From Heteronotia binoei (lineage: Eukaryota), in assembly GCF_032191835.1 (NCBI RefSeq), contig NC_083229.1:12958001-13022000 (forward strand): a stretch of DNA of 64,000 nt, given 5' to 3'. The translations under genes and the position numbers were made by a program. Below, piece by piece: positions 8,969-42,464 of the stretch (position 1 is its first letter; each line of letters opens with the position of its first letter). Under the pieces are notes generated by a model that saw only the letters and a program-made list of their open reading frames with translations, was not told where the DNA came from and ran no database searches.

Positions 8969-9904
8969 TCACAACATTGTTTGGGCGTGTGGTTGTCGTT
9001 CCATCCTGGTGTCTCTCTCCTCCTTGAAAACCCTCTGGAGGATCGCCTTCATTCTCTCCTGAAAGGTGCCGCCGTTCTGTCTCCCAGCCAAGAAATAAAT
9101 CAGTGGATTGATACTACTCTTTAGAGAGGTCCATAAGCCAACGTATATTGCGATATCGTCGGCAAACATGAAAAAAGAGACATACATCAGAATAACAAAC
9201 AAGAGGAAGGAGAGAAGAACAAGCAAGATCGCTTTCAAAAGATTCCCACACCGACACCTTGGCGATTTCAAGCAGACTTTGATGAGCAGGGTCAGAGTGG
9301 AGATGATCACAAGTAAGACACAAATCAAATTCGTCAGAATGTGACCCAAAAGTAGTATAGTTTCGTAATCATCTGGTAACAAGTCCATTAATAACAAAAA
9401 AGAGGGCACTCCAACGAGGGCAAAAGAGAGAGCCCATGCGAAGGCGCACACGGTGGTGGACAATGCTGGTGACCGGTGGCGTCGGTACCAATTTGGGAAG
9501 AAGACAGACACCCATCTGTCAATGCTAATGGCTGTCAGGAGAAGCGGACAACTGCTGTACGTCGATAGGAAGAGACTAATCAAAAGGCTTCCAAGACCGG
9601 CAGGACATTCAAGATAGTCACCGAAAGATGGTGGGTTGAAACATAGATCTACTGGAAGCAGAAATGCGAGGGATCCAAAGTCAGCCACGGCCAAGTTCAG
9701 GATGTAGATGGCCAAAGGTTTTCTTTGAATATGGAAGCTAAGAAGCCTGATGAGATTCCCATTCCCCACCAGTCCAATTAGGGAGAAGAGAATAATGAAG
9801 ACAGAAAGGATAACTCGATCGCCAATGAAACTGTATCGTAGCAGATCTTTTTCAGTAGCACTAAAGAACAAGGTCTTAAGGTCGAACCCATCCGCCACGG
9901 TCAT
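8969..9904 (-). CDS. MAS-related GPCR, gene g2, 311 aa (ATG at 9904; the ORF track's GTG extension to 9964 is not used)
   Basis: GN, LAVAD, ISIDRW, W4.50, SLKSSINPLIYFLAG; the start MTVADGF aligns with MVDGF/MTDGF of g3-g5. Confidence 0.93.
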   Translation of the reverse strand: MTVADGFDLKTLFFSATEKDLLRYSFIGDRVILSVFIILFSLIGLVGNGNLIRLLSFHIQRKPLAIYILNLAVADFGSLAFLLPVDLCFNPPSFGDYLECPAGLGSLLISLFLSTYSSCPLLLTAISIDRWVSVFFPNWYRRHRSPALSTTVCAFAWALSFALVGVPSFLLLMDLLPDDYETILLLGHILTNLICVLLVIISTLTLLIKVCLKSPRCRCGNLLKAILLVLLSFLLFVILMYVSFFMFADDIAIYVGLWTSLKSSINPLIYFLAGRQNGGTFQERMKAILQRVFKEERDTRMERQPHAQTML

Positions 9905-9966
9905 CTTCAGCTTGTGTGTGTGCGTGGGGGGGGGGGGTAATTTCTGCGGGTCCTGGGCCGCCACTC

Positions 9967-9985
9967 CTGCGAGGACAAAAGAGGC
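9967..9985 (-). promoter_or_regulatory. 3' splice acceptor of the g2 coding exon
   Basis: Minus strand cctcttttgtcctcgcag|gagtgg, conserved in g3-g5. Confidence 0.75.
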
Positions 9986-10685
9986 AGTGGAGGAGGATTC
10001 AGTTCTTGCGGTGGAGCCGAACTAACAGTGTAGCTCCAAAAATGTCTACCTGGTAGGGTTGTCAGTGAGGGGTCCCCTGCCCCCAAGCTCCACCACCCTG
10101 CCGCTGATCAGCTGGGAAATTACTCAGGAAAAGAATGAGGCCCAGGTGATGTTGTAGCAACATGTCTACATCACTTCAGTCCAGGGCCGTAGCCAGGATT
10201 TTAAAAGTCAGGGGGCTTTTTCAAAAGTTGCGGGGGGCACCCTTTCCCATCCACTGCGGGCCTTGCCGCTTCTCAGAAGCTTTCTGGGGTAGGGGCCAAA
10301 ACTGGAGGCGCTGGAAGCGGCTAAGTCAAGGGAGCCGACCTTAAAACTTGGGAGTCGAGAAGAGACTGCACCTTGCGTGCAAGCAGGGGGGTTCCTTCCA
10401 TCTCCATCTCTCTCTCTCTCTCTCCCCTTTTTAGCCAGCAGCACCATCCATCCCCCTCTCCCCAGCCCATTCCACACAGCTCCCTCTGCCTCCCACTCCT
10501 CTGCCTCCCTCCTTTCCACCTGCTGTGTTTGCTGCTCCAGTGCACGGTGCCCTGCTCTGCTCTCCCTGCTCCGGCTGTCACTCACGACAAAAACAATGGC
10601 TGCACCCTGGAGGGCCCCCTGGGAGTCAGGGGGCCCAACCTTGAAGCCAGGGGGCAGTGCCTCCACAGGCCCCCCTGTGGCTACA

Positions 10686-11320
10686 GTCAGTTTGGTGTAG
10701 TGGTTAAGTGTATAGACTCTTATCTGGGAGAACCGGGTTTGATTCCCCACTCCTCCACTTGCACCTGCTAGAATGGCCTTGGGTCAGCCATAGCTCTCAT
10801 AGACCTTCTTCCCCTGTAGTGGTTAAGTGTGTGGACTCTTATCTGGGAGAACTGGGTTGGATTCCCCACTCCTCCACTTGCACCTGCTGGAACGGCCTTG
10901 GGTCAGCCATAGCTCTCATAGACCTTCTTCCCCTGTAGTGGTTAAGTGTGCAGACTCTTATCTGGGAGAACCGGGTTTGATTCCCCACTCCTCCACTGGC
11001 ACCTGCTGGAATGGCCTTGGGTCAGCCATAGCTCTCATAGACCTTCTTCCCCTGTAGTGGTTAAGTGTGCAGACTCTTATCTGGGAGAACTGGGTTTGAT
11101 TCCCCACTCCTCCACTTGCAGGTGCTAGAGTGGCCTTGAGTCAGCCATAGCTCTCATAGACCTTCTTCTCCTGTAGTGGTTAAGTGCATGGACTCTTATC
11201 TGGGAGACTCGGGTTTGATTCCCCACTCCTCCACTTGCAGCTGCTGGAATGGCCTTGAGTAAGCCATAGCTCTGGCAAAGTTGTCCTTAAAAGGGCAGGT
11301 TTTATGAGATCTCTCAGCCC
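10686..11320 (+). repeat. Tandem array of the Squam3-like SINE 5' head, 119-bp unit x5
   Basis: tgtagtggttaag at 10696, 10815, 10934, 11053, 11172; each unit keeps the B box; the last unit continues into the SINE body. Confidence 0.9.
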
Positions 11321-11339
11321 CCTCCTATCTCTCTCTTAG

Positions 11340-11570
11340 TCCCCTCCTAACTTCCTGACCGTTAGATCAATTCCTCAGTGGAACAGGCTTCTTCGGGAGG
11401 TGGTGGGCTCTCCTTCCTTGGAGGTCTTGAAACAGAGGCTAGATGGCCATCTGACAGCAATGAAGATCCTGTGACTTTAGGGGGAGGTGTTTGTGAGTTT
11501 CCTGCATTGTGCAGGGGGTTGGACTAGATGACCCTGGAGGTCCCTTCCAACTCTATGTTTCTATGATTCT
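11340..11570 (+). mobile_element. CR1 3' end inserted into the SINE (SINE tail resumes about 11571-11666)
   Basis: cagtggaacagg...ggactagatgaccctggaggtcccttccaactctatg...attcta, then gggtgtctgttgtgggg resumes. Confidence 0.8.
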
Positions 11571-11849
11571 AGGGTGTCTGTTGTGGGGGAGGAAGATAAA
11601 GGGGATTGTAAACTGCTCTGAGATTCAGAGGGAAGAGCTATAAATCTACAGTCTTCTTCTTCTTCCATGACCCAGAAGTGACATCATCACATGAGCAGTG
11701 ATGGCAGGGCCAGCGTGTGAGAGTTGACGAACTAGGCAGTGGCCTAGGGCGCCGGCTTCCACAGGGCACCACCACCGCCATCCTCCCTCCCTCCCTGTGG
11801 CGCTGGACCCAGTGCTGCACTCCGTCCCCCCCCCCCAAAAAAAACTAGG

Positions 11850-12056
11850 CTGGTCCTTACCAGGCTCAATGGCTGTGCGTGGCTTCTAAGCGTTTGAAGC
11901 TGGGGACTCATTTGACCAACCTCGGAAGGACGGAAGGCTGAGTCAACCTCGAGCCAGCTATCTGAAAACCCAGCTTCTGCCCGGGATCGAACTCAGGTTG
12001 TGAGCAGAGCTTAGGACTGCAGTACTGCAGCTTTAACACTCTGCGCCACGGGGCTC
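11850..12056 (-). mobile_element. tRNA-derived SINE of a third family
   Basis: Minus strand gagccccgtggcgcagagtgttaaag (A box), gagttcgatccc (B box), central aggttgactcagccttccgtccttccgaggttgg domain. Confidence 0.65.
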
Positions 12057-12268
12057 CGAGCGGGGTATAAAGCCAACTCTTCTTTTTATAGCGATACATC
12101 TCTAAATCGTAGCAATCACTACAACAACCAAAACACCATATTTAAATATAGTAGGTCTACAGGATATATTTACATGCAGGGAAACATCACGGGCTTAAAA
12201 AGGAAAGCACACTTTAAAAAAACAAACAAAGATAAATTGGTTTTTTTCTGTATAGATCTAAAACTTAC

Positions 12269-12426
12269 TGCTCTGGGGTGAGTCGAGTAGAAAGCTGTCC
12301 CGGTATCGTGTACCGGCTGGAAAGTGTTGTAGGGAAGTCTAAAAGTCGGCAGGACCAGCGATGTGCCTCGTCAAACTCAATGCAAATGGGATCGGAGATG
12401 GAACCCGGTCTTGGTCTTTCCTTAGT
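12269..12426 (-). other. Predicted non-coding 5'UTR exon of g2
   Basis: Donor GCA|GTAAGT at 12268 and upstream T-rich tract/CAG; homologous block with identical donor in all four duplication units. Confidence 0.5.
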
Positions 12427-13184
12427 CTGTTGCCAGCATCATATGACAAAAACATAAAACTGTTCTCTAATCAGCTGTCCAGATAGCTATCAGTAGATTG
12501 ATAATGCTGAGGCGCTGGCTGTGTAAAGAGTCTATATACGGAAAAGAAGCCCCCTCTTGAGAACAACAGACTGGGAATCGATCTGGAATGGAAATAAACC
12601 TGTTATTCTGTAACAACGTGATTCTTTTTAAAAATGTTATTTTGGTTCATAGGATCATAGAGTTGGAAGGGACCTCCAGGGCCATCTAGTCCAACCCCCT
12701 GCACAATGCAGGGAACTCACAAACACCTCCCCCTAAATTCACAGGATCTTCATCTTCATTGTCTGGAGAAGTGTATGTGTGTATATAAAAGTGTATATAG
12801 AAGTGTATATATAGAAGTGTGTATATAGAAGTGTATGTGTGTATATAGCCACAGTGTATGTGTGTATATAAAATTTTTTGCCACTGTGTGACACAGAGTG
12901 TTGGACTGGATGGGCCGTTGGCCTGATCCAACATGGCTTCTCTTATGTTCTTATGAAGTCCCCAATTTTTCTGCTCTCCGATGACTGAAAATGGCATCTG
13001 GAAGTCCCATAGGGCATCAGCAAGAATCAAAAGCAGTAACTTGAATGGCTCCCTTTTAGAATGTCGTGAAGGAAGAAAGCTGATTGGCACGGGACGGCTG
13101 TGGCTTTGTGAGAGAACCTTTGCTTTGCATGCAGAAGGTCCCAGGTTCAATCCCCGGCATTCCCAGATAAAAGAACCAGGCAGT

Positions 13185-13405
13185 CAATGCTCCCTCTAAA
13201 CTGAGTTAGCGTGAGATGGCTCACAGATTTTTAGCCTTCAGCTCACACATTTTTGTCTTAGCTTAGGAAAAACGGCCCTAGAGCACATTTATGCAGTTTC
13301 TGCAGTAATTCACAACTTGAATGCCAGTAGCTCACAACTTTAATACTGATAGCTCACAGAGTGGAATTTTTGCTCACAAGACTCTGCAGCTTAGAGGGAA
13401 CATTG
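13185..13405. mobile_element. hAT MITE (TIR CAATGTTCCCTCTAA), 221 bp
   Basis: 15-bp TIRs and perfect 8-bp TSD caggcagt (13177-13184, 13406-13413) inside an older SINE. Confidence 0.9.
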
Positions 13406-13434
13406 CAGGCAGTAGGTGATGTGAAAGATGATGT

Positions 13435-13651
13435 GGGGAGGGACGGTGGCTCAGTTGTAGAGCATCTGCTTGGGAAGCAGAAGGTCCCAGGTTCAATCCC
13501 TGGCATCTCCAAAAAAGGGTCCCGGCAAATAGGTGTGAAAAACCTCAGCTGGAGACCCTGGAGAGCCGCTGCCAGTCTGAGAAGACAATATTGACTTTGA
13601 TGGACCAAGGGTCTGATTCAGTATAAGACAGCTTCATATGTTCATATGTTC
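13435..13651 (+). mobile_element. Squam2-like SINE nested in an older copy of the same family
   Basis: Intact head, body and catatgttc tail; the host SINE resumes at about 13652. Confidence 0.8.
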
Positions 13652-13750
13652 AAGATCTCTGCCTGAAACCCTGGAGAGCTGCTACCAGTCAGAGTGGACA
13701 ATGCTCACCTTGATGGACTGATGGTCTGGTTCAGTATAGGTACTTATAAG

Positions 13751-14473
13751 CAGTGTTCCCTCAGAGATGAGTTAGCTTGAGCTAGCTCACAGTTTTTAAG
13801 CCTCCAGCTCACACATTTTTGTCTTAGCTCAGGAAATGGCCTCAGAGCACAGCAATTTATGTACGACTCGCAACTTGAATCTTGAGAATCTTGAGCGTCC
13901 CTTGGACTGCAAGAAGATCCAATCAGTCAGTCCTAAGGGGAATCAACCTAGACTGTTCCCTGGAAGGTCAGATGCTGAAGCTGAAGCTCAAAAACTTTGG
14001 CCACCCAATGAGAAAGGAGCACTCCCTGGAGAAGACTCTTGAGAGTCCCTTGGACTGCAAGAAGATCCAATCAGTCAGTCTTAAGGGAAATCAACCCAGA
14101 CTGTTCCCTGGAAGGTCAGATGCTGAAGCTGAAGCTCAAATACTTTGGCAACCCAATGAGAAGGGAGCACTCCCTGGAGAAGATCCTGATGCTGGGAAAG
14201 ACAGAAGGCAAAAGAAGAAGGGGACAGCAAAAGATGAGACGGCTGGACAGCGTTACTGATGTAACTAACACGAATTTGAGCAGACTTCGGAGGATGGTGG
14301 AAGACAGGAGGGCCTGGCGTGACTTTGTCCCTGGGGTCGCAAAGAGTCAGACTCGACTGTGTGACTGAACCACAACCACACAACTTGAATGCCAGTAGCT
14401 CACAACCTAAATACCAGTAGCTCACAAAGTAGAATTTTTGTTCACAAGGCTCTGCAGCTTCAAGGGAACATTG
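13751..14473. mobile_element. hAT MITE (same family as 13185) interrupted by a BovB fragment
   Basis: Termini cagtgttccctc / gggaacattg; TSD cttataag / cttataaa. Confidence 0.8.
13881..14380 (+). mobile_element. BovB (RTE) LINE 3' end with a 148-bp internal tandem duplication
   Basis: Encodes VPWTARRSNQSVLREI...EKILMLGKTEGKRRRG...AWR...VAKSQTRLCD (BovB ORF C-terminus); 10-bp TSD caacttgaat (13871, 14381). Confidence 0.85.
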
Positions 14474-14534
14474 CTTATAAATGCACCATGGTATCCAAAA
14501 CAGGGACGATCTCATCACGTTTCTTCCGCAATCT

Positions 14535-14660
14535 CATCTTGATAGAACTTTCGCCGTTATGTGATAAAAACTAGAGGCTGTCTTTACTGGGTAGAGAACA
14601 GGAAATGGACAGTAAGACACATGAAGGGAAGTAAGAAGAGAGGCTTTTGTTATCATTTTT
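14535..14660. promoter_or_regulatory. Conserved GATA/ETS motif cluster upstream of g2 (candidate promoter or exon 1)
   Basis: TGATAG 14540, TGATAA 14562, CAGGAAAT 14599, GGAAGT near 14627, TTATCA 14650; all retained at 22815-22940 and 33512-33635. Confidence 0.4.
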
Positions 14661-15004
14661 ATTTAGGTTGGCCAACCTCTGGGAAGGGAATGGAGATCTC
14701 CTGAAATTACAACTGACCTCCAGTTTCTCTGGAGAAAATGGCTGCCTTAGTGGATTCTGTGGTATTATACACCAAACCCTACCTTCTCCAGGCTCTGCTC
14801 CCAAATCTCCAGGAATCTCCCAACCTGGAGTTGGCAACCTTCGTGTGTTTATTTTATTCATGTATAATCTATAGGGTTGAGGGGAGATAGGGTCAAGATG
14901 GCTGAGGACACCCATTTGCTCAGGATGGAAAAAACCCAAATGAAATGTGAGAGGATTTCTTCAGATTTTTCTCCCTCTCCTAAAATGCTAGAACAGGAGG
15001 GCCT

Positions 15005-15812
15005 CTAATGAAGACGACAGGCAGTAGGTTCAGGATGGACAGAAGGAAATACAGCTTTATGCAGAGAGTGAATAAAAATGTGGGATTCGCTGCCAGAAGA
15101 TGGAGGGATGGCCACAGGAACAAACAGTTTGAAAAGGGGCCTGGAGGCAACATCAGGGGAATGCCTCGTCATCATCTGCTCCCTGGTGTTCACCCTCCAG
15201 AGGGACTGGTTGGCCACTGTGTGAGACAGGATGCTGGACTAGGTGCACCACTGGTCTGATCCAGCAGGGTCCTTCTGATGTTCTAATGAAGGCCTTGGCT
15301 TCTATGCCCTGTTGTTGGCCTTCCAGAGGAACTGGTTGGCCACTGTGTGAGACAGGATGCTGGACTAGGTGGATCATGGGTCTGATCCAGCAGGGTCCTT
15401 CTTATGTTCCAATGAAGGCCTTGGCCTCTATGCCCTGTTGTTGGCCTTCCAGAGGAACTGGTTGGCCACTGTGTGAGACAAGATGCTGGACTAGGTGGAC
15501 CACTGGTCTGATCCAGCAGAGTCCTTCTGATGTTCTAATGAAGACTTTGGCCTCTATGCCCTGTTGTTGGCCTTCCAGAGAAACTGGTTGGCCACTGTGT
15601 GAGACAGGATGCTGGACTAGGTGGACCACTGGTCTGATCCAGCAGGGTCCTTCTGATGTTCTAATGAAGACCTTGGCCTCTATGCCCTGTTGTTGGCTCT
15701 TCAGAGGAACTGGTTGGCCACTGTGTGAGGCAGGATGCTGGACTAGGTGGACCACTGGTCTGATCCAGCAGGGTCCTTCTGATGTTCTAATGAAGGTCTT
15801 GGCCTCTGTGTC
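15005..15812 (+). repeat. CR1 3' end followed by a 126-bp tandem array of its 3'UTR (about 5 units)
   Basis: atgaag at 15286, 15412, 15538, 15664, 15790; the upstream piece encodes RFRMDRRKYSFMQRV (CR1 RT end). Confidence 0.85.
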
Positions 15813-16650
15813 CAGACCCGGCACTAGGGTTTCCTGTGCCCCAGACCAAACCCTGCTCCTCTGCCCCCCCCAAAATATATATATTTGCGCGTGCTTTGCG
15901 TGCAAGGGGAGGGACGGTAGCTCAGTGGTAGAGCATCTGCTTGGGAAGCAGAAGGTCCCAGGTTCAATCCCTGGCATCTCCAAAAAAGGGTCCAGGCAAA
16001 TAGGTGTGAAAAACCTCAGCTTGAGACCCTGGAGAGCCGCTGCCAGTCTGAGAAGACAATACTGACTTTGATGGACCAAGGGTCTGATTCGGTGTAAGGC
16101 AGCTTCATATGTTCATATGTTCATGTACCAATGATGTCATTGGTTTAAATTGATAAGTGAATTATGGTTTTATATGTTTTATGGAATTGATTGTTTTTAT
16201 GATATTGTAAGCCGCCCTGAGTCCGCTTGCGGAGAGGGCGGGATATAAATGTAAAGTAATAAATAATAAATAAATAAATGTCATACCCCCCAAATTTGCC
16301 AAGGTCTCCCGAGAGCCTCGGCAAGTCTTGGTGAAGTCCAGAAGGCAGCGTGCACACTCAGAGCCTGACCCTGAGTGTGCGCGCTGCCAAGGCCCCCCAC
16401 TTTGCCAAGGTCTTCTGAACCTCAGGAGGCTTTGGTGAAGTCTGGAAGGCAGCACACGCTTGCTCAGAGCCCGACTTTGAGCGCATGCTGCCACGCTACC
16501 AGCACTTTGCTGAGGTCTCCCGAGTCTTGGGAGGCCTTGGCGAAGTCTGGAAGGCAGCGCGTGTGGGAGAGGGGGTGCCTCATGGTGCCCCTAGGCCAGG
16601 CAGCACCCTAGGTGGCCACCTACTTGGCCTACTCCCAAGTACTGACACTG
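15813..16650. mobile_element. hAT-like element carrying a nested Squam2-like SINE (15906-16123), an L2-like tail and three 105-bp palindromic subrepeats
   Basis: Termini cagacccggc / actgacactg, degenerate 8-bp TSD tctgtgtc / tctctgcc; site empty in the paralog near 35355. Confidence 0.55.
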
Positions 16651-19642: not shown

Positions 19643-19760
19643 GAGAGAGAGAGAGATGGGATCTGTTGAAATTCAGACACGCTTTCTTAACGACTTTAAG
19701 TGAAAAGCCTAAAGGAATCTATGTTCTTCAAGCAACAGGCAAGATGTTCTAATGACGGCA

Positions 19761-20690
19761 TCACAACATTGTTTGGGTACGTGGTTGTAGTCCCATCTTG
19801 GTGTCTCTCTCCTCCTTGAAAACTCTCTGGAGGATCGCCTTCATTCTCTCCTGAAATTTGCCACCATTCTGTCTCCCAGCCAGGAAATAAATCAGTGGAT
19901 TTATACTACTGTTTAGAGAGGTCCATAAACCAAAATATTGCTGTATACCGACGGGCAGCGTGAAGGTAAAGAAAGTTGTCAGGATCATAAACAGGAAGAA
20001 AGAGAGAAACATCAATAAGACCACTCTCAAAAGACTCCCACACTGACACCTTGGTGATTTCAAGCAGACTCTGGTGAACAGAGTCAGAGTGGAGATGATC
20101 AAAATTAAGACACAAATCAAAGAAGTCAGAGCATAACTGTAAAGAAATACAGGTGCATAATAATAGCGTATCAAATCAATATAATATAGAAATAAGGGCA
20201 CCCCAATGAGGGCAAAAGGGAGAGCCCATATGAAGACACACACGGTGGTGGACAACGCTGGTGACCGGTGGTGTCGGTACCAATTTGGGAAGAAGACAGA
20301 CACCCATCTGTCAATGCTGATGGCTGTCAGGAGAAGCAGACGACTGCTGCACGTCAATAGCAAGAGACTGAACAAAAACCTGCCAAGATCACTAGGACAC
20401 CCAGGATAGTCATAGAAAGATGGTGGGTTGAAACATAGATCTAGCGGAAGCAGAAACACGAGGGATCCAAAGTCAGCCACGGCCAAGTTCAGGATGTAGA
20501 TGGCAAAAGGTTTCCTTTTCATACGGAAGCCAAGAAGCCGGATGAGATTTCCATTCCCCACCAGTCCAATAATGCAGAAGAAAATAATGAAGACAGAGAG
20601 GATAAATTGATCGCCAATATAATTGAACCATCGCAAATCTTTTTCGTCTTTGTGAGAGAATAAGGTCTTAAGGTTGAACCCATCCACCAT
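19761..20690 (-). CDS. MAS-related GPCR, gene g3, 309 aa
   Basis: Kozak accATGg; GN, LAVAD, ISIDRW, SLNSSINPLIY; acceptor cttttgtcctcgtag|gag at 20745. Confidence 0.95.
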   Translation of the reverse strand: MVDGFNLKTLFSHKDEKDLRWFNYIGDQFILSVFIIFFCIIGLVGNGNLIRLLGFRMKRKPFAIYILNLAVADFGSLVFLLPLDLCFNPPSFYDYPGCPSDLGRFLFSLLLLTCSSRLLLLTAISIDRWVSVFFPNWYRHHRSPALSTTVCVFIWALPFALIGVPLFLYYIDLIRYYYAPVFLYSYALTSLICVLILIISTLTLFTRVCLKSPRCQCGSLLRVVLLMFLSFFLFMILTTFFTFTLPVGIQQYFGLWTSLNSSINPLIYFLAGRQNGGKFQERMKAILQRVFKEERDTKMGLQPRTQTML

Positions 20691-24695: not shown

Positions 24696-24884
24696 TCACA
24701 AACGTCTCTATTTGACATCCTGCAAGGAGGATTTCCTCAGCTAAAACGATAAACATCTATGAGGAATTTGCCTTTCCAACGTGAGATCGATGGACTCCAT
24801 CAAGGAAGCCCTGACTCTCAGTTTGCAGGACCTGAGCAAGACTGTTGATGGCAGGAGTTTTTTAGAGGTCAGTAATTAATAGAA

Positions 24885-26000
24885 GAAAAAGATATTGGAT
24901 TTATATCCCGTCCTCCACTCCGAAGAGTCTCAGAGCGGCTCACAATCTCCTTTACCTTCCCCCCCCACAACAGACACCCTGTGAGGTAGATGAAGATATT
25001 GGATTTATATCCCACCCTCCACTCCAAAGAGTCTCAGAGCGGCTCACAATCTCCTTTACCTTCCCCCCCCCCCACAACAGACACCCTGTGAGGTAGAAGA
25101 AGATATTGGATTTATATCCTGCCTTCCACTCCAAAGAGTCTTAGAGCGGCTCACAATCTCCTTTACCTTCCTCCCCCCCAACAGACACCCTGTGAGGTAA
25201 ATGAAGATATTGGATTTATATCCCGCCCTCCACTCCGAAGAGTCTCAGAGTGGTTCACAATCTCTTTTACCTCCCCCCCACCACAACAGACAACCTGTGA
25301 GGTAGATGAAGATATTGGATTTGTATCACACCCTCCACTCCGAAGAGTCTCAGAGCGGCTCACAATCTCCTTTACCTTCCTCCCCCACAACAGACACCCT
25401 GTGAGGTAGATGAAGATATTGGATTTATATCCCGCCCTCCACTCCGAAGAGTCTCAGAGTGGTTCACAATCTCTTTTACCTCCCCCCCACCACAACAGAC
25501 AACCTGTGAGGTAGATGAAGATATTGGATTTGTATCACACCCTCCACTCCGAAGAGTCTCAGAGCGGCTCAAAATCTCCTTTACCTTCCTCCCCCACAAC
25601 AGACACCCTGTGAGGTAGATGAAGATATTGGATTTATATCCCGCCCTCCACTCCGAAGAGTCTCAGAGTGGCTCACAATCTCCTTTACCTTCCACCCCCC
25701 CCGCACACACAACAAACACCCTGTGAGGTAGATTAAGATATTGGATTTGTATCCCACCCTCCACTCCGAAGAGTCTCAGAGTGGCTCACAATCTCCTTTA
25801 ACTTCCACCCCCACAACAGACACCCTGTGAGGTGGGTGGGGCTGAGAGGGCTCTTACCGCAGCTGCCCTTTCAAGGACAACCTCTGCCAGAGCTATGGCT
25901 GACCCAAGGCCATGCTAGCAGGTGCAAGTGGAGGAGTGGGGAATCAAACCCGGTTCTCCCAGATAAGAGTCCGCACACTTAACCGCTACACCAAACTGGC
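24885..26000 (-). repeat. Squam3-like SINE with 9 tandem tails (SINE-derived satellite)
   Basis: gatattgg at 24891, 24995, 25102, 25206, 25311, 25415, 25520, 25624, 25737; head and body at about 25830-26000. Confidence 0.9.
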
Positions 26001-26004
26001 TCTC

Positions 26005-30370: not shown

Positions 30371-31291
30371 TCACAACATGGTTCGGGTATGTAGTTCCAT
30401 CCTGGTGTCTCTCTCCTCCTTGAAAACTCTCTGGAGGATCCCCTTCATCCTCTCCTGAAATTTGCCACCATTCCGTCTCCCAGCCAAGAAATAAATCAGC
30501 GGATTTACACTACTCTTTAGAGAGGTCCATAAACCAAAATATACTATGCTTAAGGGCGTCATGAGAAAACAGACAGTTGTCAGGATAATAAACAGGAGGG
30601 AGGAGAGAAGCATCAATAAGACCACTCTCAAAAGACTCCCACACTGACACCTTGGTGATTTCAAGCAGACTCTGGTGAACAGAGTCAGAGTGGAGATGAT
30701 CACAAGTAAGACACAAATCAAAGAAGTCAGAGAGTAACTGTAAAGAAATACAGGTGCATAATAATAGCGTATCAAATTAATATAATATAGAAATAAGGGC
30801 ACTCCAACGAGGGCAAAAGGGAGAGCCCATATGAAGACACACACGGTGGTGGACAACGCTGGTGACCGGTGGCGTCGGTACCAATTTGGGAAGAAGACAG
30901 ACACCCATCTGTCAATGCTAATGGCTGTCAGGAGAAGTAGACGACTGCTGCACGTCAATAGGAAGAGACTCAACAAAAACCAGCCAAGATCAAAAGGACA
31001 CCAAGGATAGTCGTAGAAAGATGGTGGGTTGAAACAAAGATCTAGCGGAAGCAGAAATGCGAGGGATCCAAAGTCAGCCACGGCCAAGTTCAGGATGTAG
31101 ATGGCAAAAGGTTTCCTTTTCATACGGAAGCCAAGAAGCCGGATGAGATTTCCATTCCCCACCAGTCCAATAATGCAGAAGAGAATAATGAAGACAGAGA
31201 GGATAATCTTGTCGCCTATGAAATTGAACCATTGCGAAACTTTTTTGTCTTTGTGAGAGAATAAGGCCTTAAGGTTGAACCCATCCGTCAT
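30371..31291 (-). CDS. MAS-related GPCR, gene g4, 306 aa
   Basis: Intact 7TM ORF; ISIDRW, SLKSSVNPLIY; acceptor at 31346. Confidence 0.95.
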   Translation of the reverse strand: MTDGFNLKALFSHKDKKVSQWFNFIGDKIILSVFIILFCIIGLVGNGNLIRLLGFRMKRKPFAIYILNLAVADFGSLAFLLPLDLCFNPPSFYDYPWCPFDLGWFLLSLFLLTCSSRLLLLTAISIDRWVSVFFPNWYRRHRSPALSTTVCVFIWALPFALVGVPLFLYYINLIRYYYAPVFLYSYSLTSLICVLLVIISTLTLFTRVCLKSPRCQCGSLLRVVLLMLLSSLLFIILTTVCFLMTPLSIVYFGLWTSLKSSVNPLIYFLAGRRNGGKFQERMKGILQRVFKEERDTRMELHTRTML

Positions 31292-32596: not shown

Positions 32597-32759
32597 NNNN
32601 NNNNNNNNNNNNNNNNNNNNNNNNNNNNNNNNNNNNNNNNNNNNNNNNNNNNNNNNNNNNNNNNNNNNNNNNNNNNNNNNNNNNNNNNNNNNNNNNNNNN
32701 NNNNNNNNNNNNNNNNNNNNNNNNNNNNNNNNNNNNNNNNNNNNNNNNNNNNNNNNNNN
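32597..32759. other. Assembly gap (163 N)
   Basis: N run at the position of the CCTT/CCCT tract seen at about 21985-22050. Confidence 0.98.
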
Positions 32760-35460: not shown

Positions 35461-36176
35461 TCGTTATGGTCTTAATGCAGCTGTGGAGGAACTGACAATG
35501 AATGGGACCAATTTCCCACCCGCCGCTCTCACGCTCCTCTTCTCAGCGGGGCTTCCGTCCGATTTCACACTATCTGCCCCGGGGCTGCAACCAGCTTCGC
35601 CTTTATCCTGCAGCAAACAGAAGCTAGTTTTTAGAGGTTTCTGTTGGCTGCGCAAAAAAGCCGAAGCTAGATGGAGCCAGCATTCCCTCTAAGCTGAGTT
35701 AGCGTGAGGCAGCTCACAGATTCTTAGCCTCCAGCTCACACCTTTTTGTCTTCGCTCTGGAAGGATAACCCCAGAGCACATTAATTGATGCAGCAGCTCA
35801 CAACTTGAAGCCCAGGTACTCGCCATGTTAATGCCAGTAGCTCACAAAGTAGAATTTTTGCTCACAAGACTCTGGCAGCTTAGAGGGAACATCGGTTGAA
35901 GCCCCGAGGCAGATAGTGCAAAATCAGACGGAAGCCCCGCTGAGAAGAGGGTGTGAGAGCAGGGTAAGGTGAGTGGGAAATCGGCCTTTCTCTCACAAAC
36001 ATCTCTATTTGACATCCTGCAAGGAGGATCTCCTCAGCTAACGCGATAAACATCAATGAGGAATTTGCCTTTCCAATGTGAGATCGATGGACTCCATCAA
36101 GGAAGCTCTGACTCTCAGTTTGCGGGACCTGAGCAAGACTGTTGATGGTAGGAGTTTTTTAGAGGTCAGTAATTAA

Positions 36177-36905
36177 GAGAAGAAGAAGAAGAAGAAGAAG
36201 AAGAAGAAGAAGAAGAAGAAGAAGAAGAAGAAGAAGAAGAAGAAGAAGATATTGGATTTATATCTCGCCCTCCACTCCGAAGAGTCTCAGAGTGGCTCAC
36301 AATCTCCTTTACCTCCGCCCCCCCCACAACAGACACCCTGTGAGGTAGATAAAGATATTGGATTTATATCCCGCCCTCCACTCCGAAGAGTTGCAGAGTG
36401 GTCACAGTCTCCTTTACCTCCCCCACAACAACAGGCATCCTGTGAGGTAGATGAAGATATTGGATTTATATCCCGCCCTCCACTCCGAAGAGTCTCAGAG
36501 TGGCTCACAATCTCCTTTACCTTCCACACCCCAACACAACAGACACTCTGAGAGGTAGATGAAGATATTGGATGTGTATCCTGCCCTCCACTCCAAAGAG
36601 TCTCAGAGCGGCTCACAATCTCCTTTACCTCCCCCCCCCCACAACAGACACCCTGTAAGGTAGATGAAGATGTTGGATTTGTATCCCGCCCTCCACTCCG
36701 AAGAGTCTCAGAGCGGCTCACAATCTCCTTTCCCTTCCTCCCCCACAACAAACACCCTGTGAGGTGGGTGGGGCTGAGAGGGCTGTCACCGCAGCTGAGC
36801 TGTGGCTGAACCAAGTCCATGCCAGCAGGTGCAAGTGCAGGAGTGCGGAATCAAACCCGGTTCTCCCAGATAAGAGTCTGCACACTTCACCGCTACACCA
36901 AACTG
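36177..36905 (-). repeat. (GAA)n of about 24 units plus Squam3-like SINE with 5 tandem tails
   Basis: Paralog of 24885-26000 with fewer tails and an expanded trinucleotide tail. Confidence 0.9.
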
Positions 36906-38077
36906 ACGCTCCAGGGCTTTTTTTTTTCGTAGCAGGATCTCCTTTGCCTATTGGGCCACACCTCCCAGATGTAGCCAATCTTCCTGGAGCTTACAGTAGG
37001 GCCTGTACAAAGAACCCTGTAAGCTCTTGGAGGATTGGCTACATCAGGGGTGTGTGGCCTAATTTGCAAAGGAGTTCCTGCTACAAAAAAAGCCCCCTGG
37101 GGCTGACATAAGTCAGAATGCGAGCATCCGCTTGGTTGCAGTCAGCTGACCTAGTCACACTAATTTGTGCTACGTGAAACTCAAGTCTGGATCCCTGCAG
37201 CATAACTTTATGTGAAATTGCAGGCAATTTTGAAGAAAACAAGCTCCAGTTTTCTCCCCCTCCTTCCTCTAAAAGAAACAAGATGAGAGACGTCTGACGA
37301 AAGCATTTATCAGCCTGGCATGCTGAATGGGTCAAAGCCTTCCGTAGCGGTTTCAAAGGTGCTAACGTCCCAATGCTTGCCAACAGCAAAGGCTATCCAG
37401 TTAATGCAACTTGATACAATCATTCCAATGATTATCTTCCGTACCTTTAGCTATGAGCATTCATTTCTCGTATCCTCCTGCAGAGGAGTCTAAGGCGACA
37501 AAGGCATGACTCTGCTCAGAAGTTTGAAAGTGAAGGGAAATAAGAAAGGTGAAGGGTGACTGGATGGGAATAAAAGGAGCAGATACTGGTAGGCATGTTG
37601 AGGCTTCATGCAGGGTTGCCAACCTCCAGACGAGGCCTGGAGATCTCAACTAACCTTCAGAGTACATAAATCAGTTTCCTGGGAGAAAGTGCCTACATCA
37701 GAGAGTGGACTGTGGCATTATATTAGAGTTGCCAATCCCCAGTTGGGGCAGGGGATCCTCCGGTTTGGAGGCCCTCCTCCTACTTCAGGGTCATCAGAAA
37801 GAGGGGGGGGGAGAATGTCTGCTGGGCACTCCATTATGGAGACCGATTCCCATAAGGTATAGTGGAAAATTGATCTGTAGGTATCTGGGGCTCTGGGGAT
37901 GGGGCTGTTTATTGAGATAGAGGCAGCAAATTTTCCGTGCAGCATTCAGTGCCTCTCCTCAAATCACCCTCCGAGTTTCAAAAAGATTGAACCAGGCAGT
38001 CCAGTTCTATGATCCCCAAATGAAGGTGCCCCTATCTTTCACTATTCCCAATGGAGGAAAGGCATTTAAAAGGTGCG

Positions 38078-38543
38078 ATCCCTGGGCCAAAGGAGGTAAA
38101 ATTGCAGAACAGCCGCGCACGGGCCTTCTCCATTGCAGCTCCATGCCTGTGGAACCAGCTCCCGGAAGAGGTGCGGGCCCTGCGGAGTCTTGACCAATTC
38201 CGCAGGGCCTGCAAGACCATCCTTTTTAGGTTGGCCTTCGCAGACTGCTGACTAAGGATGGCCGAATTGATGGACCCGCCAAAGTGACTCTGTTCAGTGA
38301 TCTTCGCCATTATGCAAATAGACAGAATAGCGCCAGGAACATCACTGTTGCTGTTAAATTACGTAAATTGGAATGATTTTTAAGATAATGTTGATTCTAA
38401 ATTACTGTATAACTTTTTAATGCTGTTTTAAAATTACTGTATAACTTTTTAATTGAATATGTTGTTAGCCGCCCTGAGCCTGCCTAGGCGGGGAGGGTGG
38501 GATATAAATAAAATTTATTATTATTATTATTATTATTATTATA
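38078..38543 (+). mobile_element. L2 LINE 3' end inserted in a hAT MITE
   Basis: Encodes RARAFSIAAPCLWNQLPEEVRALRSLDQFRRACKTILF; (ATT)n tail; empty site near 27175. Confidence 0.85.
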
Positions 38544-38899
38544 TTTAAATGTGGTGGCCAGAACTCCCTTTGGAGTTCAATTATGCTTGCTGCTGACTCC
38601 ACCCCAAAAGTCCCCAGGTATTTATTGAATTGAACCTGGTCACCCTACATTATATCCAGCTGAGGTCCCTCCCAGGGATCTACTCTCAATTCTCCAGGAA
38701 TTTCTCAATCTAGAGTTGGCAACTCTACCCATGACCACTGAGGACAGAGAGCCAATTTGCACTAGTCCCTCAGGGTAAAGATCAGTCCTTTCCCATCCAT
38801 GCATAAGCATCAAGAAGCAAGTCTGTAAATCCTACATCCAGTTCCCCAGAAGACATTTATGCAATTCCCTTTCAGGCAGGTGATTCTTTTTTGTTGGTA

Positions 38900-39245
38900 G
38901 AAAAAGCCCAGCAGAAACTCATTTGCATATTAGGCCACACCCATCGCATCACCATTTTCACACGGCTTTTGTAGGAAAGACGCAGCAGGAACTAATTTGC
39001 ATATTAGGCCACACCCATGACATCACCAGTTTCACACAATTTTTTGTAGGGGAGGCCCAGCAGGAACTCATTTGCATATTAGGCCACACCCATGGCATCA
39101 CCATTTCCATACAACCTTTTGTAGGAAAGGCCCAACAGGAACTCATTTGCATATTAGGCCACACCCATGACATCACCATTTTCACACAGCTTTTTGTAGG
39201 ACAAGCCCAGCAGGAACTCATTTGCATATTAGGCCACACACCCCG
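38900..39245 (+). repeat. Octamer-bearing minisatellite, 75-bp unit x5
   Basis: ATTTGCAT at 38921, 38995, 39070, 39145, 39220. Confidence 0.9.
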
Positions 39246-41540
39246 GATGCCCAGCCAGCTAGAACTGCGTTCCTGTGTGTTCCTGCTCAAAAAAAGCTCT
39301 GCTTACAGACAAGATGGACTAATATCTCTTAAAAAGAAAAGAAAATGTTGTCGCTATATGAGGTCTGCTGTTTTAAGAATGTATTAAAGCAATATTGTCA
39401 CCTATATAAGGACTGCTGCTTTAAGAATGTATTAGCAACACACGATACCACCTGTTTCTGAAAGTCAAGGGTACAGCAGGGTCCGGTACCTCTCTGACAA
39501 CAAGCATCCAGGAGTAGATTCCTTTTCAAGTTGGATGTTATGTGTTGGAACTGGAGTTTGGCCTTAGGGCCAGCAGAGAATTGACTGAGCTGGAGAACCT
39601 AAAACAAGAGCCACCTGGATTCAGGAAGGAGGCCCATCAGGGATCGTTAGGCCAGCTATTAACCTATAGTTGCGTGCAATGGGATGATGGTAATGGGATT
39701 CAGGAAGGAGGCCCATCAGGGATTGTTAGGCCAGCTATTAACCTATAGTTGTGTGTAATGGGATGATGGTAATGGGTTTGCCATGGCTCCCTGGTGCCAA
39801 AAAGGGTGAGGACCACTGCTCTAAATGAAATGAGACAGAGAGACATTTTACACAAGCATTTATTAGCCTGGTATGCTCACAGGTAGCAGATCCAAGGCTG
39901 CCAGCATCCTAATATTTGTCAAAAGCAAAGGCTATCAAGTCGATACAATATGACATAATCGTAGCAATTATTATTCTCAATACCATTAACGATGAGCATG
40001 GATCTCTCACATCACTCTGCAGAAAAATCTAAAGAGAAAAAGGCATGTCTCTGCTCAGAAGATAAGAAAGGTCAAGGGTAAATGGAAGGGGATAAAAGGA
40101 GCAGATGCTGGCAGCCATGCTGAAGCTTCACATAGGGTCGCCAACTTCCAGAGGTGGGGTTGCCAGGTCCAACTTAGAAGATACCTGGGGACTTTGGGGA
40201 TGGAGCCAGTAGACTTTCTCATTCCATAAAATACATACATAAATAAGCATACAGTCTTCATTTCCTCACCCCCCAGCAGCTGGCTATACTCCCAACTAAA
40301 TGAAAGTGAACACAAGCACACGCTCGCTCACTCACAAAGCAGCCAAAATAAACACAGTTTGGAAGCGCGCACTTTTGTGATCTCATTGGGACAATTTACT
40401 GACGAGTTGCTGAATGGAACCATCTCCTGTATTTCGATCAACTTCTGGAGGCCAACACAGGGAAACAAAAGGTTCTAGTTTGCCCTTTCCTATGCAAATG
40501 ACTTAAAGAATGGAGGGGCTGGGCTGGCTTCCCTAACTTTCTCACAGCTTCACAGGCTTTGGAAACAGGCGCGCGGCACTGCCAGCTCACCCCACTCACT
40601 TCCAGCCTTGCTTTTAGTGAGATTTAAAGGCACACACCCCTTCCAAATTTCTTCTAAGCCTATCGAAGTGGAAAGGTACATGGTGGCCATTGGAGCAAGG
40701 CTTCCCCCTGCTGACCAGTTGGCTGCTGGTGGGAGGAGCCTGCAAAACCGAGGGTTCCCTTGCTGGGACCTGGGGACTGGCAAGTCTATCCAGACGGGAC
40801 CTGGAGATCTCCCAGAATTACAACTGATCTCCAGACTAGAGAGATCAGTTTCCTGGGAGAAAGTGGCTACTTCAAAGGGTGGACTCTGTGGCATTATGTC
40901 TGCTGAGGTTCATCCCCAGGATCTACTCTGAAATCTCCTGGAATTTCTCAGTCCAACGTTGGCAAACCTACACATGACCTTTGAAAAAAGTGAGCCAGTT
41001 TGCACTACTCCCTCAGGGCATCATATCAGTACTTTCCCATCCCCACAGAAACAAGTCCTTAAGTCCCGCATCCAGTTCCCCAGAAGACATTTATGCGACT
41101 CCTTTACAGGCGAGAGGGCTCCCCCACCAGAGTTCCCTCTAAGCTGAGTTAGCGTGAGCTAGCGCACAGATTTTGAGCCTCCAGCTCGCACATTTTTGCG
41201 ACCCCAGAGCACAGTCATTCCTGCAGTAGCTCACAACTTTAATGCCGGGAGCTTACAAAGTAGAAGTTTTGCTCACAAGACTCTGAAGCTTAGAGGGAAC
41301 ATTGCTGCCCACCCCAGAAACTCCGAGCTCTTCCTCTCCTGTTCAACATTTCTCCTTCGTGATCACGCAATGAGAAATGGTGATGCTACTCAATGGTGTT
41401 ATAACACCAATAACCAATGTGAGGGGAGGGCCTCCAAGCCAGGGCATCCCCTGCCCCCCCCCCTGGGGATTGACAACCCTAGAAAAGTCTACAGGGATCT
41501 ACGTGCTTCAAGCTACAGGCCAGATGTTCTAATGCTGCCA

Positions 41541-42464
41541 TCACAACATTGTTCGGGTACGTGGTTGTAGTTCCATCCTGGTGTCTCTCTCCTCCTTGAA
41601 AACTCTCTGGAGGATCGCCTTCATCCTCTCCTGAAATTTGCCACCATTCCGTCTCCCAGCCAAGAAATAAATCAGCGGATTTACACTACTCTTTAGAGAG
41701 GTCCATAAACCAAAATATACTACACTTAAGGGCGCCATGAGAAAGCAGACAGTTGTCAGGATAATAAACAGGAAGAACGAGAGAAGCATCAATAAGACCG
41801 CTCTCAAAAGACTCCCACACTGACACCTTGGTGATTTCAAGCAGACTTTGAAGAGAATCAGAGTGGAGATGATCACAAGGAAGACACAAATAGAAATAAT
41901 CATATTGTCCCCTAAAAGAAATACAGGTGCATAATAATAATGTATCAAATCAATAAAATATAGAAATAAGGGCACTCCAATGAGGGCAAAAGGGAGAGCC
42001 CATATGAAGACACACACGATGGTGGACAATGCTGGTGACCGGTGGCGTTGGTACCAATTTGGGAAGAAGACAGACACGCATCTGTCAATGCTGATGGCTG
42101 TCAGGAGAAGCAGACGACTGCTGCACGTCGATAGCAAGAGACTGAGCAAAAACCAGTGAAGTTCAATAGGACACGGAGGATAGTAGTAGAAAGATGGCGT
42201 GTTGAAACATAGATCTAGCGGAAGCAGAACTGCGAGGGATCCAAAGTCAGCCACGGCCAAGTTCAGGATGTAGATGGCCAAAGGTTTGCTTTTCATACGG
42301 AAGCCAACAAGCCGGATGAGATTTCCATTCCCCACCAGTCCAATTATGCAGAAGAGAATAATGAAGACAGAGAGGATAATTTGGTCGCCAATGAAATTGA
42401 CCCATTGCAAATCTTTTCTGTCTTTGTGGGAGAATAAGGTCTTAAGGTTGAACCCATCCGTCAT
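41541..42464 (-). CDS. MAS-related GPCR, gene g5, 307 aa (ATG at 42464; the ORF track's 392 aa starts at an intronic GTG)
   Basis: MTDGFNLK start aligns with g3/g4; ISIDRC, SLKSSVNPLIY; acceptor cttttgtcctcgcag|gag at 42519. Confidence 0.94.
   Translation of the reverse strand: MTDGFNLKTLFSHKDRKDLQWVNFIGDQIILSVFIILFCIIGLVGNGNLIRLVGFRMKSKPLAIYILNLAVADFGSLAVLLPLDLCFNTPSFYYYPPCPIELHWFLLSLLLSTCSSRLLLLTAISIDRCVSVFFPNWYQRHRSPALSTIVCVFIWALPFALIGVPLFLYFIDLIHYYYAPVFLLGDNMIISICVFLVIISTLILFKVCLKSPRCQCGSLLRAVLLMLLSFFLFIILTTVCFLMAPLSVVYFGLWTSLKSSVNPLIYFLAGRRNGGKFQERMKAILQRVFKEERDTRMELQPRTRTML

What the first reader, a model, noticed from the sequence alone, without database searches (positions are those of the whole stretch)
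8969..42464. Basic residues fill the class A sodium pocket: R3.39 and K7.45
Seen, counting back from R3.50 and P7.50: g3, g4 and g5 have Arg at 3.39 (TCSSRLLLLTAISIDR); g2, g4 and g5 have Lys at 7.45 (SLKSS); D2.50 is kept in all; g1 has the usual G3.39 and N7.45. Established: 3.39 and 7.45 coordinate Na+ with D2.50, and engineered basic residues at 3.39 (M2 S110R, EP4 G106R, A2A S91K) mimic Na+ and stabilise the inactive state. Inference: these may be natural Na+-independent, inactive-biased or decoy receptors; g4 and g5 carry both charges.
Basis: partly seen in the sequence, partly recalled or inferred. Interest (0 to 1): 0.7.

Follow-up and report, generated by a model that had tools for sequence, protein, structure and literature searches.

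The report
Gecko itch-type receptors with built-in charges
A gecko-only group of Mas-related receptor genes carries one or two positively charged residues where most such receptors hold a sodium ion, and lacks two hinge prolines; similar built-in charges are already known in a few human receptors that still signal, so this is a new variant, not a new principle.

Summary
Five intact single-exon genes lie on the minus strand. All are MAS/MRGPR-family class A receptors. All keep D2.50. At 3.39/7.45, g1 has G/N, g2 C/K, g3 R/N, and g4 and g5 R/K. Both N gaps are intergenic.

New here: g2-g5 belong to a gecko-only, fast-evolving clade, also found in Paroedura, Eublepharis and Euleptes. It sits beside a conserved canonical gene, g1. 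In the clade a basic 7.45 is ancestral (8 of 10 members). R3.39 is a CGT codon shared by Heteronotia and Paroedura. P6.50 is lost in 10 of 10 members and P5.50 in 9 of 10. The ORFs are kept by selection, and G-protein-coupling motifs are retained.

The inference is only partly supported. A side-chain cation replacing Na+ is plausible. Natural precedents are GPR151 K3.39 and DP1 K2.54. "Decoy or inactive" is not indicated: CCR7, CCR10 and CXCR6 (R7.45) and DP1 all signal. No coordinates, expression data or assays were available.

Verdict: a new variant of a known kind, of moderate interest.

The parts
2623..3504 (-). g1: canonical MRGPR-like gene (293 aa) with G3.39 (3172-3174), N7.45 (2728-2730), D2.50 (3271-3273), P5.50 and P6.50 present
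   Evidence: Orthologs of 76-78% identity sit next to clade genes in Paroedura and Eublepharis. dN/dS is 0.16-0.29.
8969..9904 (-). g2: clade member (311 aa from the ATG) with C3.39 TGT (9548-9550), K7.45 AAG (9119-9121), D2.50 (9680-9682), L5.50 and L6.50
19761..20690 (-). g3: clade member (309 aa) with R3.39 CGT (20340-20342), N7.45 AAC (19911-19913; reverted from K), D2.50 (20472-20474), L5.50 and L6.50
30371..31291 (-). g4: clade member (306 aa) with R3.39 CGT (30941-30943), K7.45 AAG (30515-30517), D2.50 (31073-31075), L5.50 (30707-30709) and L6.50 (30581-30583). The CDS is a g3/g5 mosaic.
   Evidence: The AF2 model has pLDDT 86.9. The best structural match is MRGPRX2, Z 23.6.
41541..42464 (-). 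g5: clade member (307 aa) with R3.39 CGT (42114-42116), K7.45 AAG (41691-41693), D2.50 (42246-42248), F5.50 and L6.50
32597..32759 (.). Assembly gap (163 N), intergenic, about 1.3 kb upstream of the g4 start codon. It is not part of any ORF.
43738..43909 (.). Second assembly gap (172 N), intergenic, about 1.3 kb upstream of the g5 start codon

Best explanation
g2-g5 are members of a gecko-specific, rapidly diversifying subfamily of MAS-related (MRGPR) class A receptors. They are arrayed in tandem next to a conserved canonical family member, g1. In this subfamily the transmembrane core has been rebuilt.
- N7.45 became Lys or Arg at the base of the subfamily.
- G3.39 became Arg (codon CGT) before Heteronotia and Paroedura split.
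- The hinge prolines P6.50 and P5.50 were lost.
- D2.50 was kept.

Inferred: the ammonium or guanidinium group of K7.45 and/or R3.39 pairs with D2.50 and takes the place of the allosteric Na+ ion. The resting state would then be held by a built-in cation and would not depend on Na+.

Inferred from precedent and from conserved coupling motifs: the receptors are still ligand-sensing and still signal, and are not decoys. Activation would involve moving or re-pairing the tethered cation rather than expelling Na+.
For: Shown:
- Family assignment.
- Residue states and codons.
- A gecko-only clade with SH-aLRT 98-99.
- Among 10 complete clade members, 7.45 is K or R in 8. It is N in 173 of 189 squamate relatives surveyed. 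6.50 is not Pro in 10 of 10, against 176 of 189 Pro in the family. 5.50 is not Pro in 9 of 10.
- R3.39 is CGT in three Heteronotia genes, Paroedura P0007 and Logan P0006. K7.45 is AAG throughout.
- Every complete clade member keeps an acidic 2.50 and at least one basic (K/R/H) pocket residue. The two losses of basic 7.45 (g3, P0006) both occur where R3.39 is present.
- Synteny with the g1 ortholog holds in two other gecko genera.
- Selection keeps the ORFs open. About 9 stop codons would be expected under neutrality for g2-g5, giving P about 1e-4. Cross-species dN/dS is 0.4-0.7.
- D3.49, R3.50, P3.57, W34.51 and N7.49 are retained.
- Amino-acid variation among g3-g5 is concentrated in the extracellular half, 34% against 16%, P = 3e-4.

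Precedents:
- GPR151: K3.39 to D2.50 at 3.0 A.
- DP1: K2.54 to D2.50, a Na+ mimic and activation switch in a receptor that also lacks P5.50.
- Engineered R3.39 lies in the Na+ site.
- R7.45 occurs in CCR7, CCR10 and CXCR6, which signal.
Against: - No atomic coordinates could be obtained, so no salt bridge was measured.
- Two cations against one carboxylate in g4, g5 and P0007 leave a net buried +1. No clade-specific acidic residue appears in the core to balance it.
- 3.39 is not fixed. R, C, H and S all occur. C (TGT) and H (CAT) are CpG-transition neighbours of CGT, so selection on Arg looks weak.
- In Sphaerodactylus the Arg is at 3.40, not 3.39.
- dN/dS among g3, g4 and g5 is 0.8-1.1, and dS is also raised in the variable half. 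Positive selection is therefore not demonstrated.
- No RNA run was listed, so expression is unknown.
- No MRGPR has been shown here to be Na+-sensitive in the first place.
Confidence: 0.5

Rival explanations
1. One reading: the basic residues lock the receptors in an inactive conformation. The receptors would then be non-signalling decoys or scavengers, or arrestin-only receptors.
For: - Engineered R3.39 is used precisely to stabilise inactive states.
- The authors of the GPR151 structure describe that receptor, with its K3.39, as activation-resistant.
- The clade has also lost P6.50 (10 of 10) and P5.50 (9 of 10), the pivots of the canonical TM6/TM5 movement.
- Some members have degraded NPxxY motifs: P0009 NSLIY, P0012 NL..F, P0007 NPLIF.
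Against: - D3.49-R3.50, P3.57, W34.51, N7.49 and helix 8 are conserved in g2-g5. Classical decoy chemokine receptors have altered DRY motifs (own knowledge).
- Natural R7.45 receptors and DP1 with K2.54 signal.
- The intracellular half is the more conserved half among paralogs. That is not expected if coupling were irrelevant, although arrestin binding could also explain it.
Confidence: 0.2
2. Relaxed constraint: the Na+ pocket matters little in this large, lineage-specific MRGPR expansion. The basic residues are tolerated drift, helped by CpG mutation and gene conversion, and not a selected mechanism.
For: - Other squamate MRGPR groups carry other odd pocket states: D3.39, D7.45, K7.49 with S3.50, and an independent K7.45 in P0160.
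- 3.39 varies among R, C, H and S within the clade through single CpG-type steps.
- 7.45 reverted to N in g3 and changed to Q in P0006.
- dN/dS is about 1 among g3-g5.
- K7.45 of g4 arrived with a g5-like conversion tract.
Against: - A basic 7.45 has persisted from the Eublepharidae-Gekkonidae ancestor in 8 of 10 members, although the proteins are only 46-61% identical.
- D2.50 is kept in all.
- No complete clade member has zero basic (K/R/H) pocket residues (not statistically significant; P about 0.4 under independence).
- The CGT Arg codon survives in five genes despite its hypermutable CpG.
- The ORFs are clearly under selection.
Confidence: 0.22
3. Constitutive activity: neutralising D2.50 with a tethered cation, in a core without the proline hinges, gives ligand-independent signalling. 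This would be an extreme form of the high basal activity of MAS/MRGPR receptors.
For: D2.50N raises basal activity in DP1. MAS-family receptors are known for basal activity (own knowledge, not tested here).
Against: In every studied case a cation at this site stabilises the inactive state, not the active one. Nothing in the sequences bears on it directly.
Confidence: 0.08

Closest known systems
Human GPR151 (orphan class A GPCR with natural K3.39)
   Same: A natural basic residue at 3.39 with D2.50 retained. In GPR151 the Lys is 3.0 A from D2.50 and overlaps the Na+ site (PMC13167728).
   Different: It belongs to a different family. It has one cation, not two, and Lys rather than Arg. GPR151 also has a VCF motif instead of DRY, whereas the gecko genes keep DR. 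GPR151 keeps W6.48. The loss of P5.50/P6.50 seen here is not reported for it.
Human prostaglandin D2 receptor DP1 (K76 at 2.54 in the sodium pocket)
   Same: A side-chain amine salt-bridged to D2.50 occupies the Na+ position and blocks Na+ entry. The receptor lacks P5.50 and most class A motifs yet signals. The Lys acts as an activation switch (PMC12508460).
   Different: The cation comes from TM2 (2.54), not from 3.39 or 7.45. In DP1 the agonist reaches the Lys directly. MRGPR ligand pockets are shallow (own knowledge), so the same switch cannot be assumed.
Chemokine receptors CCR7, CCR10 and CXCR6 (natural R7.45)
   Same: A natural basic residue at 7.45 with D2.50 retained, and non-Trp 6.48 (PMC6037435). 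CCR7 couples to Gi.
   Different: They have Arg rather than Lys and G or S at 3.39. P6.50 loss is not reported for them. A sodium site is still described in inactive CCR7, coordinated by N1.50, D2.50, N7.49 and Y7.53.
Engineered S/G3.39R/K thermostabilised receptors (alpha1A-AR S113R, EP4, D2; M2 S110R and A2A S91K from own knowledge)
   Same: Arg at 3.39 designed to mimic Na+ and seen in the Na+ site (PMC10282093).
   Different: These are artificial single substitutions in otherwise canonical receptors. Their functional effect, an inactive-state lock, need not transfer to a core that has co-evolved for tens of millions of years.
Mammalian MAS/MRGPR receptors (MAS1, MRGPRD, E, X1, X2, X4)
   Same: The closest relatives by sequence and fold. 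They are single-exon genes without C3.25 or W6.48. The tandem, fast-evolving gene arrays are also a family trait (own knowledge).
   Different: The mammalian members and g1 have G3.39 and N7.45; g1 and the squamate family have P5.50 and P6.50.

Membership tests
Class A (rhodopsin-like) GPCR | 7tm_1 profile match and seven-helix fold with N1.50, D2.50, R3.50, W4.50 and NPxxY anchors | tested here: met
   Pfam PF00001 E = 3e-9 to 3e-19. The AF2 model has seven TM helices plus helix 8, pLDDT 86.9. The anchors are listed. P5.50 and P6.50 are missing in g2-g5.
MAS-related GPCR (MRGPR) family | Closest sequence and structure relatives are MAS1/MRGPR | tested here: met
   PDB sequence search: MAS1 E = 1.5e-24, MRGPRE 6e-24, MRGPRD 3e-22, X4/X2/X1 about 1e-17. 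VIA-align top match is MRGPRX2, Z 23.6, rmsd 3.3 A over 251 residues. Z values are nearly tied with other class A receptors.
MAS-related GPCR (MRGPR) family | Non-canonical core: no C3.25 disulfide cysteine and no W6.48 toggle | tested here: met
   In g4, 3.25 is G103 and 6.48 is I235. In the family, 6.48 is A, S or G. That this is a family trait comes from my own knowledge of the MRGPRX2 structures.
Class A receptors with a side-chain cation in the Na+ pocket (GPR151 / DP1 type) | Basic residue at a pocket position together with an acidic 2.50 | tested here: met
   g3: R3.39. g2: K7.45. g4 and g5: both. D2.50 is present in all.
Class A receptors with a side-chain cation in the Na+ pocket (GPR151 / DP1 type) | Charged group within salt-bridge distance of D2.50, excluding Na+ | not testable with these tools
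   Structure prediction returns no coordinates. No MD was available.
Atypical / decoy GPCRs | Disrupted DRY or other G-protein-coupling motifs | tested here: not met
   D3.49 and R3.50 are kept in all clade members. P3.57, W34.51 and N7.49 are kept. P7.50 is kept in 8 of 10 and Y7.53 in 8 of 10.
Atypical / decoy GPCRs | Ligand binding without G-protein activation | not testable with these tools
   This needs cell assays.
Pseudogenes / decaying duplicates | Stops, frameshifts or neutral evolution | tested here: not met
   There are no stops or frameshifts. P(no stop) is about 1e-4 under neutrality for g2-g5. Cross-species dN/dS is 0.4-0.7. However, dN/dS is about 1 among g3-g5.

The most novel reading that the evidence does not exclude
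A natural class A receptor subfamily holds its core together with two tethered cations (R3.39 and K7.45) around a single D2.50. It has also dispensed with both the TM5 and TM6 hinge prolines. It would therefore activate by a route that needs neither Na+ release nor the canonical proline-kink swing of TM6. That would be a natural experiment on how much of the 'universal' class A activation pathway is dispensable.
Probability: 0.2. Interest if true: 0.7.

Novelty: new variant of a known kind. Interest (0 to 1): 0.45.

Why it matters
Basic residues engineered into the Na+ pocket are a standard trick for freezing receptors. Natural examples are few: GPR151, DP1 and three chemokine receptors. This gecko subfamily adds a natural series within one tandem array, from no cation (g1) through one cation at either position (g2, g3) to two cations (g4, g5). 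It comes with orthologs in other geckos and with simultaneous loss of P5.50 and P6.50. That gives a ready-made, matched set of sequences for testing what a tethered cation does to Na+ sensitivity, basal activity and coupling in a non-engineered background. It also flags an undescribed lizard MRGPR lineage for annotation. No physiological role is known, which limits the wider impact.

Tried and rejected
- Side-chain geometry: AF2 gave a confident model, but no coordinate file is exposed. No distances could be measured.
- Conformational state of the model: Foldseek and VIA-align scores are tied between active and inactive class A structures, so they are uninformative.
- Expression: no RNA run was listed for g4. 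Read laying was therefore not used. The Logan contig carrying ortholog P0006 (SRR13336341) could not be typed as RNA or DNA.
- Positive selection: CDS divergence is 2-3 times that of the 5' flank, and amino-acid changes cluster in the extracellular half. But dS is raised there too and dN/dS is about 1 in both halves. I do not claim positive selection. A gene-conversion mosaic explains much of the pattern.
- Correlated evolution of basic 7.45 with loss of P6.50: both arose once on the same branch, so no independent replicates exist.
- 'At least one cation always kept': true in 10 of 10 members, counting H3.39 as basic, but expected with P about 0.4 by chance.
- Literature: searches for K7.45, R3.39 and loss of P6.50, and for gecko MRGPRs, found nothing on this clade. 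The search for S110R/G106R/S91K returned only unrelated hits. Katritch 2014 is not held.
- The large representative-protein search was not used, because the word search already recovered the family.
Full report
**What is there**

The window holds five uninterrupted single-exon ORFs on the minus strand:
- g1 2623-3504
- g2 8969-9904 (ATG start)
- g3 19761-20690
- g4 30371-31291
- g5 41541-42464

All five match Pfam 7tm_1. Against solved structures the best sequence matches are MAS1 (E = 1.5e-24), MRGPRE, MRGPRD and MRGPRX4/X2/X1. An AlphaFold2 model of g4 built on 116 homologs has mean pLDDT 86.9 and pTM 0.86. Its best structural matches are MRGPRX2, MRGPRD and MRGPRX1: Z 23.6, rmsd 3.3 A over 251 residues. 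Other class A receptors score almost as high. These are MAS-related (MRGPR) class A receptors.

Named proteins on the same 138.6-Mb contig are from Heteronotia binoei. The genome is therefore almost certainly Bynoe's gecko, as another note of this scan also says.

The two runs of N (32597-32759 and 43738-43909) lie about 1.3 kb upstream of the start codons of g4 and g5. No ORF or reading frame depends on them. I left them alone.

I counted from R3.50 (SIDR) and P7.50 (NPLIY). HMMER alignments to MAS1 and MRGPRE are gapless between these anchors and the sites of interest. They put g4 R117 opposite G3.39 and g4 K259 opposite N7.45. The states and codons are:
- g1: G3.39 (GGC), N7.45 (AAC)
- g2: C3.39 (TGT), K7.45 (AAG)
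- g3: R3.39 (CGT), N7.45 (AAC)
- g4 and g5: R3.39 (CGT), K7.45 (AAG)
- D2.50 (GAC) in all five

In MRGPRX2 the pocket residues are D75 (2.50), G116 (3.39) and N271 (7.45) (PMC13266011). So G/N is the family norm and these are pocket positions.

**A gecko-only clade with a rebuilt core**

A word-based search returned several hundred squamate MRGPR-like proteins. I tabulated 189 of them.
- At 3.39: G 93, S 80, D 6, R 5, C 4, H 1.
- At 7.45: N 173, K 8, D 4, Q 1, R 1 (two sequences have a gap there).

All R or H at 3.39, and all but one of the K or R at 7.45, fall in one well-supported clade (SH-aLRT 98 and 99). The clade contains only geckos:
- g2-g5 (Heteronotia)
- Paroedura picta P0007 (R/K), P0008 (H/K, with E2.50) and P0009 (C/K)
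- an unnamed Logan contig, P0006 (R/Q)
- Eublepharis macularius P0010 (S/R) and P0012 (C/K)
- a partial Euleptes protein, P0121

A Sphaerodactylus entry, P0004, is a gene model that joins three N-terminal halves of tandem clade genes. There the Arg sits at 3.40 and Ser at 3.39.

I compared the clade with columns that are at least 80% conserved in the rest of the family.
- P6.50 is replaced by Leu or Val in 10 of 10 members. Across the 189 proteins tabulated, 176 have Pro there.
- P5.50 is replaced by Leu, Phe or Ser in 9 of 10.
- C3.51 is replaced by Trp in most.
- A Pro at the end of ICL2 is replaced by Ser in 10 of 10.
- F6.43 is replaced by Ser in 9 of 10.

It is the most uniform signature of the clade.

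**History of the two sites**

K7.45 is AAG in every gene for which I have DNA. R in P0010 is AGG, Q in P0006 is CAG and N in g3 is AAC. Each is one step from AAG. On the tree, basic 7.45 needs four changes: a gain at the clade base, losses in g3 and P0006, and an independent gain in the otherwise canonical Eublepharis protein P0160.

R3.39 is CGT in g3-g5, P0007 and P0006. C is TGT (g2, P0009) and H is CAT (P0008). Both are CpG-transition neighbours of CGT. S in P0010 is TCT. Arg was therefore present before Heteronotia and Paroedura diverged, but it has been replaced several times.

Every complete clade member keeps an acidic 2.50 and at least one basic (K/R/H) pocket residue. Both losses of basic 7.45 happened where R3.39 is present. 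With ten related sequences this pattern is not significant; I estimate P about 0.4 under independence.

No clade-specific acidic residue appears in the core to balance a second cation.

**Are the genes alive?**

The locus is syntenic across geckos. Orthologs of g1 (76-78% identity) lie next to clade genes in Paroedura (L002) and Eublepharis (L003).

g1 orthologs evolve under clear purifying selection, with dN/dS 0.16-0.29. Clade genes compared across species give 0.4-0.7. Among the young paralogs g3, g4 and g5, dN/dS is 0.8-1.1.

Under strictly neutral substitution about 4 stop codons would be expected on the g3-g5 tree (P of none = 0.016). About 9 would be expected for g2-g5 (P about 1e-4). 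All length differences are in frame. The ORFs are therefore maintained by selection.

Amino-acid differences among g3-g5 are concentrated in the extracellular half of the protein: 34% of positions against 16%, Fisher P = 3e-4. The CDS diverges two to three times faster than 1.2 kb of 5' flank, K2P 0.076-0.105 against 0.033-0.045. However, synonymous divergence is also raised in the variable half and dN/dS is about 1 in both halves. In addition, g4 is a mosaic: g3-like for nt about 240-690 and g5-like for nt about 690-870. I therefore read the pattern as gene conversion plus retention of diverged ligand-side segments. I do not read it as proven positive selection.

The cytoplasmic coupling elements D3.49, R3.50, P3.57, W34.51 and N7.49, and in most members P7.50 and Y7.53, are conserved.

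No RNA run was listed for g4, so expression is unknown.

**Comparison with what is known**

Natural cations in the Na+ pocket are already documented.
- Human GPR151 has K3.39. By cryo-EM it lies 3.0 A from D2.50 and overlaps the Na+ site. The authors link it to resistance to activation (PMC13167728).
- Human DP1 has K2.54 salt-bridged to D2.50 at the Na+ position. Na+ does not enter in MD. On agonist binding the Lys swings up to the ligand and acts as the activation switch. DP1 also lacks P5.50 and most class A motifs, yet it signals (PMC12508460).
- R7.45 is natural in CCR7, CCR10 and CXCR6 (PMC6037435). CCR7 couples to Gi and arrestin. A sodium site lower in the bundle is described for its inactive structure (bioRxiv 10.1101/2025.11.24.690334).
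- Engineered R3.39 is confirmed for alpha1A-AR, EP4 and D2 (PMC10282093). M2 S110R and A2A S91K rest on my own knowledge; my search for them returned only unrelated hits.

I found no paper on this gecko clade, on K7.45 or on natural R3.39, and none on loss of P6.50.

**Verdict on mechanism**

Shown:
- the residues, their conservation and their history
- the accompanying loss of P5.50 and P6.50
- the maintenance of the ORFs by selection
- the retention of the coupling motifs

Inferred:
- K7.45 and/or R3.39 pair with D2.50 and replace Na+ (about 65% for at least one of the two residues)
- the receptors remain ligand-sensing and signalling rather than decoys (about 60% given the first inference)

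So does simple tolerance of drift in a plastic pocket (about 0.2), because other squamate MRGPR groups carry D3.39, D7.45 or K7.49 with S3.50.

The finding is real. It is a new variant of a known kind. What is new is a natural graded series from zero to two cations, combined with loss of both hinge prolines, in an undescribed lizard MRGPR lineage. Without structure coordinates, expression data or assays, the functional claim remains open.

Noticed in passing
window 30371-31291 (g4): The g4 CDS is a mosaic. Nucleotides about 240-690 are nearly identical to g3, and about 690-870 are nearly identical to g5. The 3' flank aligns with g5 (K2P 0.037) but not with g3. K7.45 of g4 lies in the g5-like tract.
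   Followed up: yes
window 4484-5502, 24884-25833, 36241-36765, 44147-45398, 52658-53245: Blocks of a tandem repeat with a period of about 104 bp recur, roughly one per duplication unit of the gene array. They were seen as staggered self-hits in blastn.
   Followed up: no
window 32597-32759 and 43738-43909: The two assembly gaps sit at the same relative place in the g4 and g5 repeat units, about 1.3 kb upstream of each ATG. This suggests a hard-to-assemble element at that spot.
   Followed up: no
window 45901-46038 (+ strand): A short MRGPR-like fragment of 47 aa, 45% identical to the TM5 region of g1, lies on the opposite strand. It is probably a gene relic.
   Followed up: no
proteins P0095, P0097, P0100 (Podarcis, Zootoca, Lacerta); P0076 (Varanus); P0163 (Rhineura); P0023 (Hemicordylus): Other squamate MRGPR-like receptors carry Lys at 7.49 (KPxxY instead of NPxxY). 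In the lacertids this comes with S3.50 instead of R3.50. It is a different charged rearrangement of the same core region.
   Followed up: partly
protein P0160 (Eublepharis macularius): An independent K7.45 occurs in an otherwise canonical family member (S3.39, P5.50 and P6.50 kept). The protein sits in a separate 31-member clade.
   Followed up: partly
proteins P0059, P0088 (Sphaerodactylus), P0114 (Euleptes), P0082, P0103: Several squamate MRGPR-like proteins have Asp at 3.39, a second acidic residue in the pocket next to D2.50. P0059 and P0088 form one well-supported gecko pair.
   Followed up: no
protein P0004 (UniRef A0ACB8FEB1, Sphaerodactylus townsendi): This database entry is a gene model that joins three N-terminal halves of tandem clade genes. 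In these copies the Arg is at 3.40 and Ser at 3.39.
   Followed up: partly
g2-g5 ICL3 (g4 residues 214-217) and ECL1 (g4 residues 86-98): Two clade-specific features. One is a CxC motif in ICL3 (RCQCG) where the family has R/H/Q residues. The other is a longer ECL1 with two cysteines, found only in the Heteronotia genes.
   Followed up: no
window 15286-16079, both strands: Long ORFs here encode an internally repeated peptide (units like ...MPCCWPSRGTGWPLCETGCWTRW...). This looks like a tandem DNA repeat read through, not a gene.
   Followed up: no
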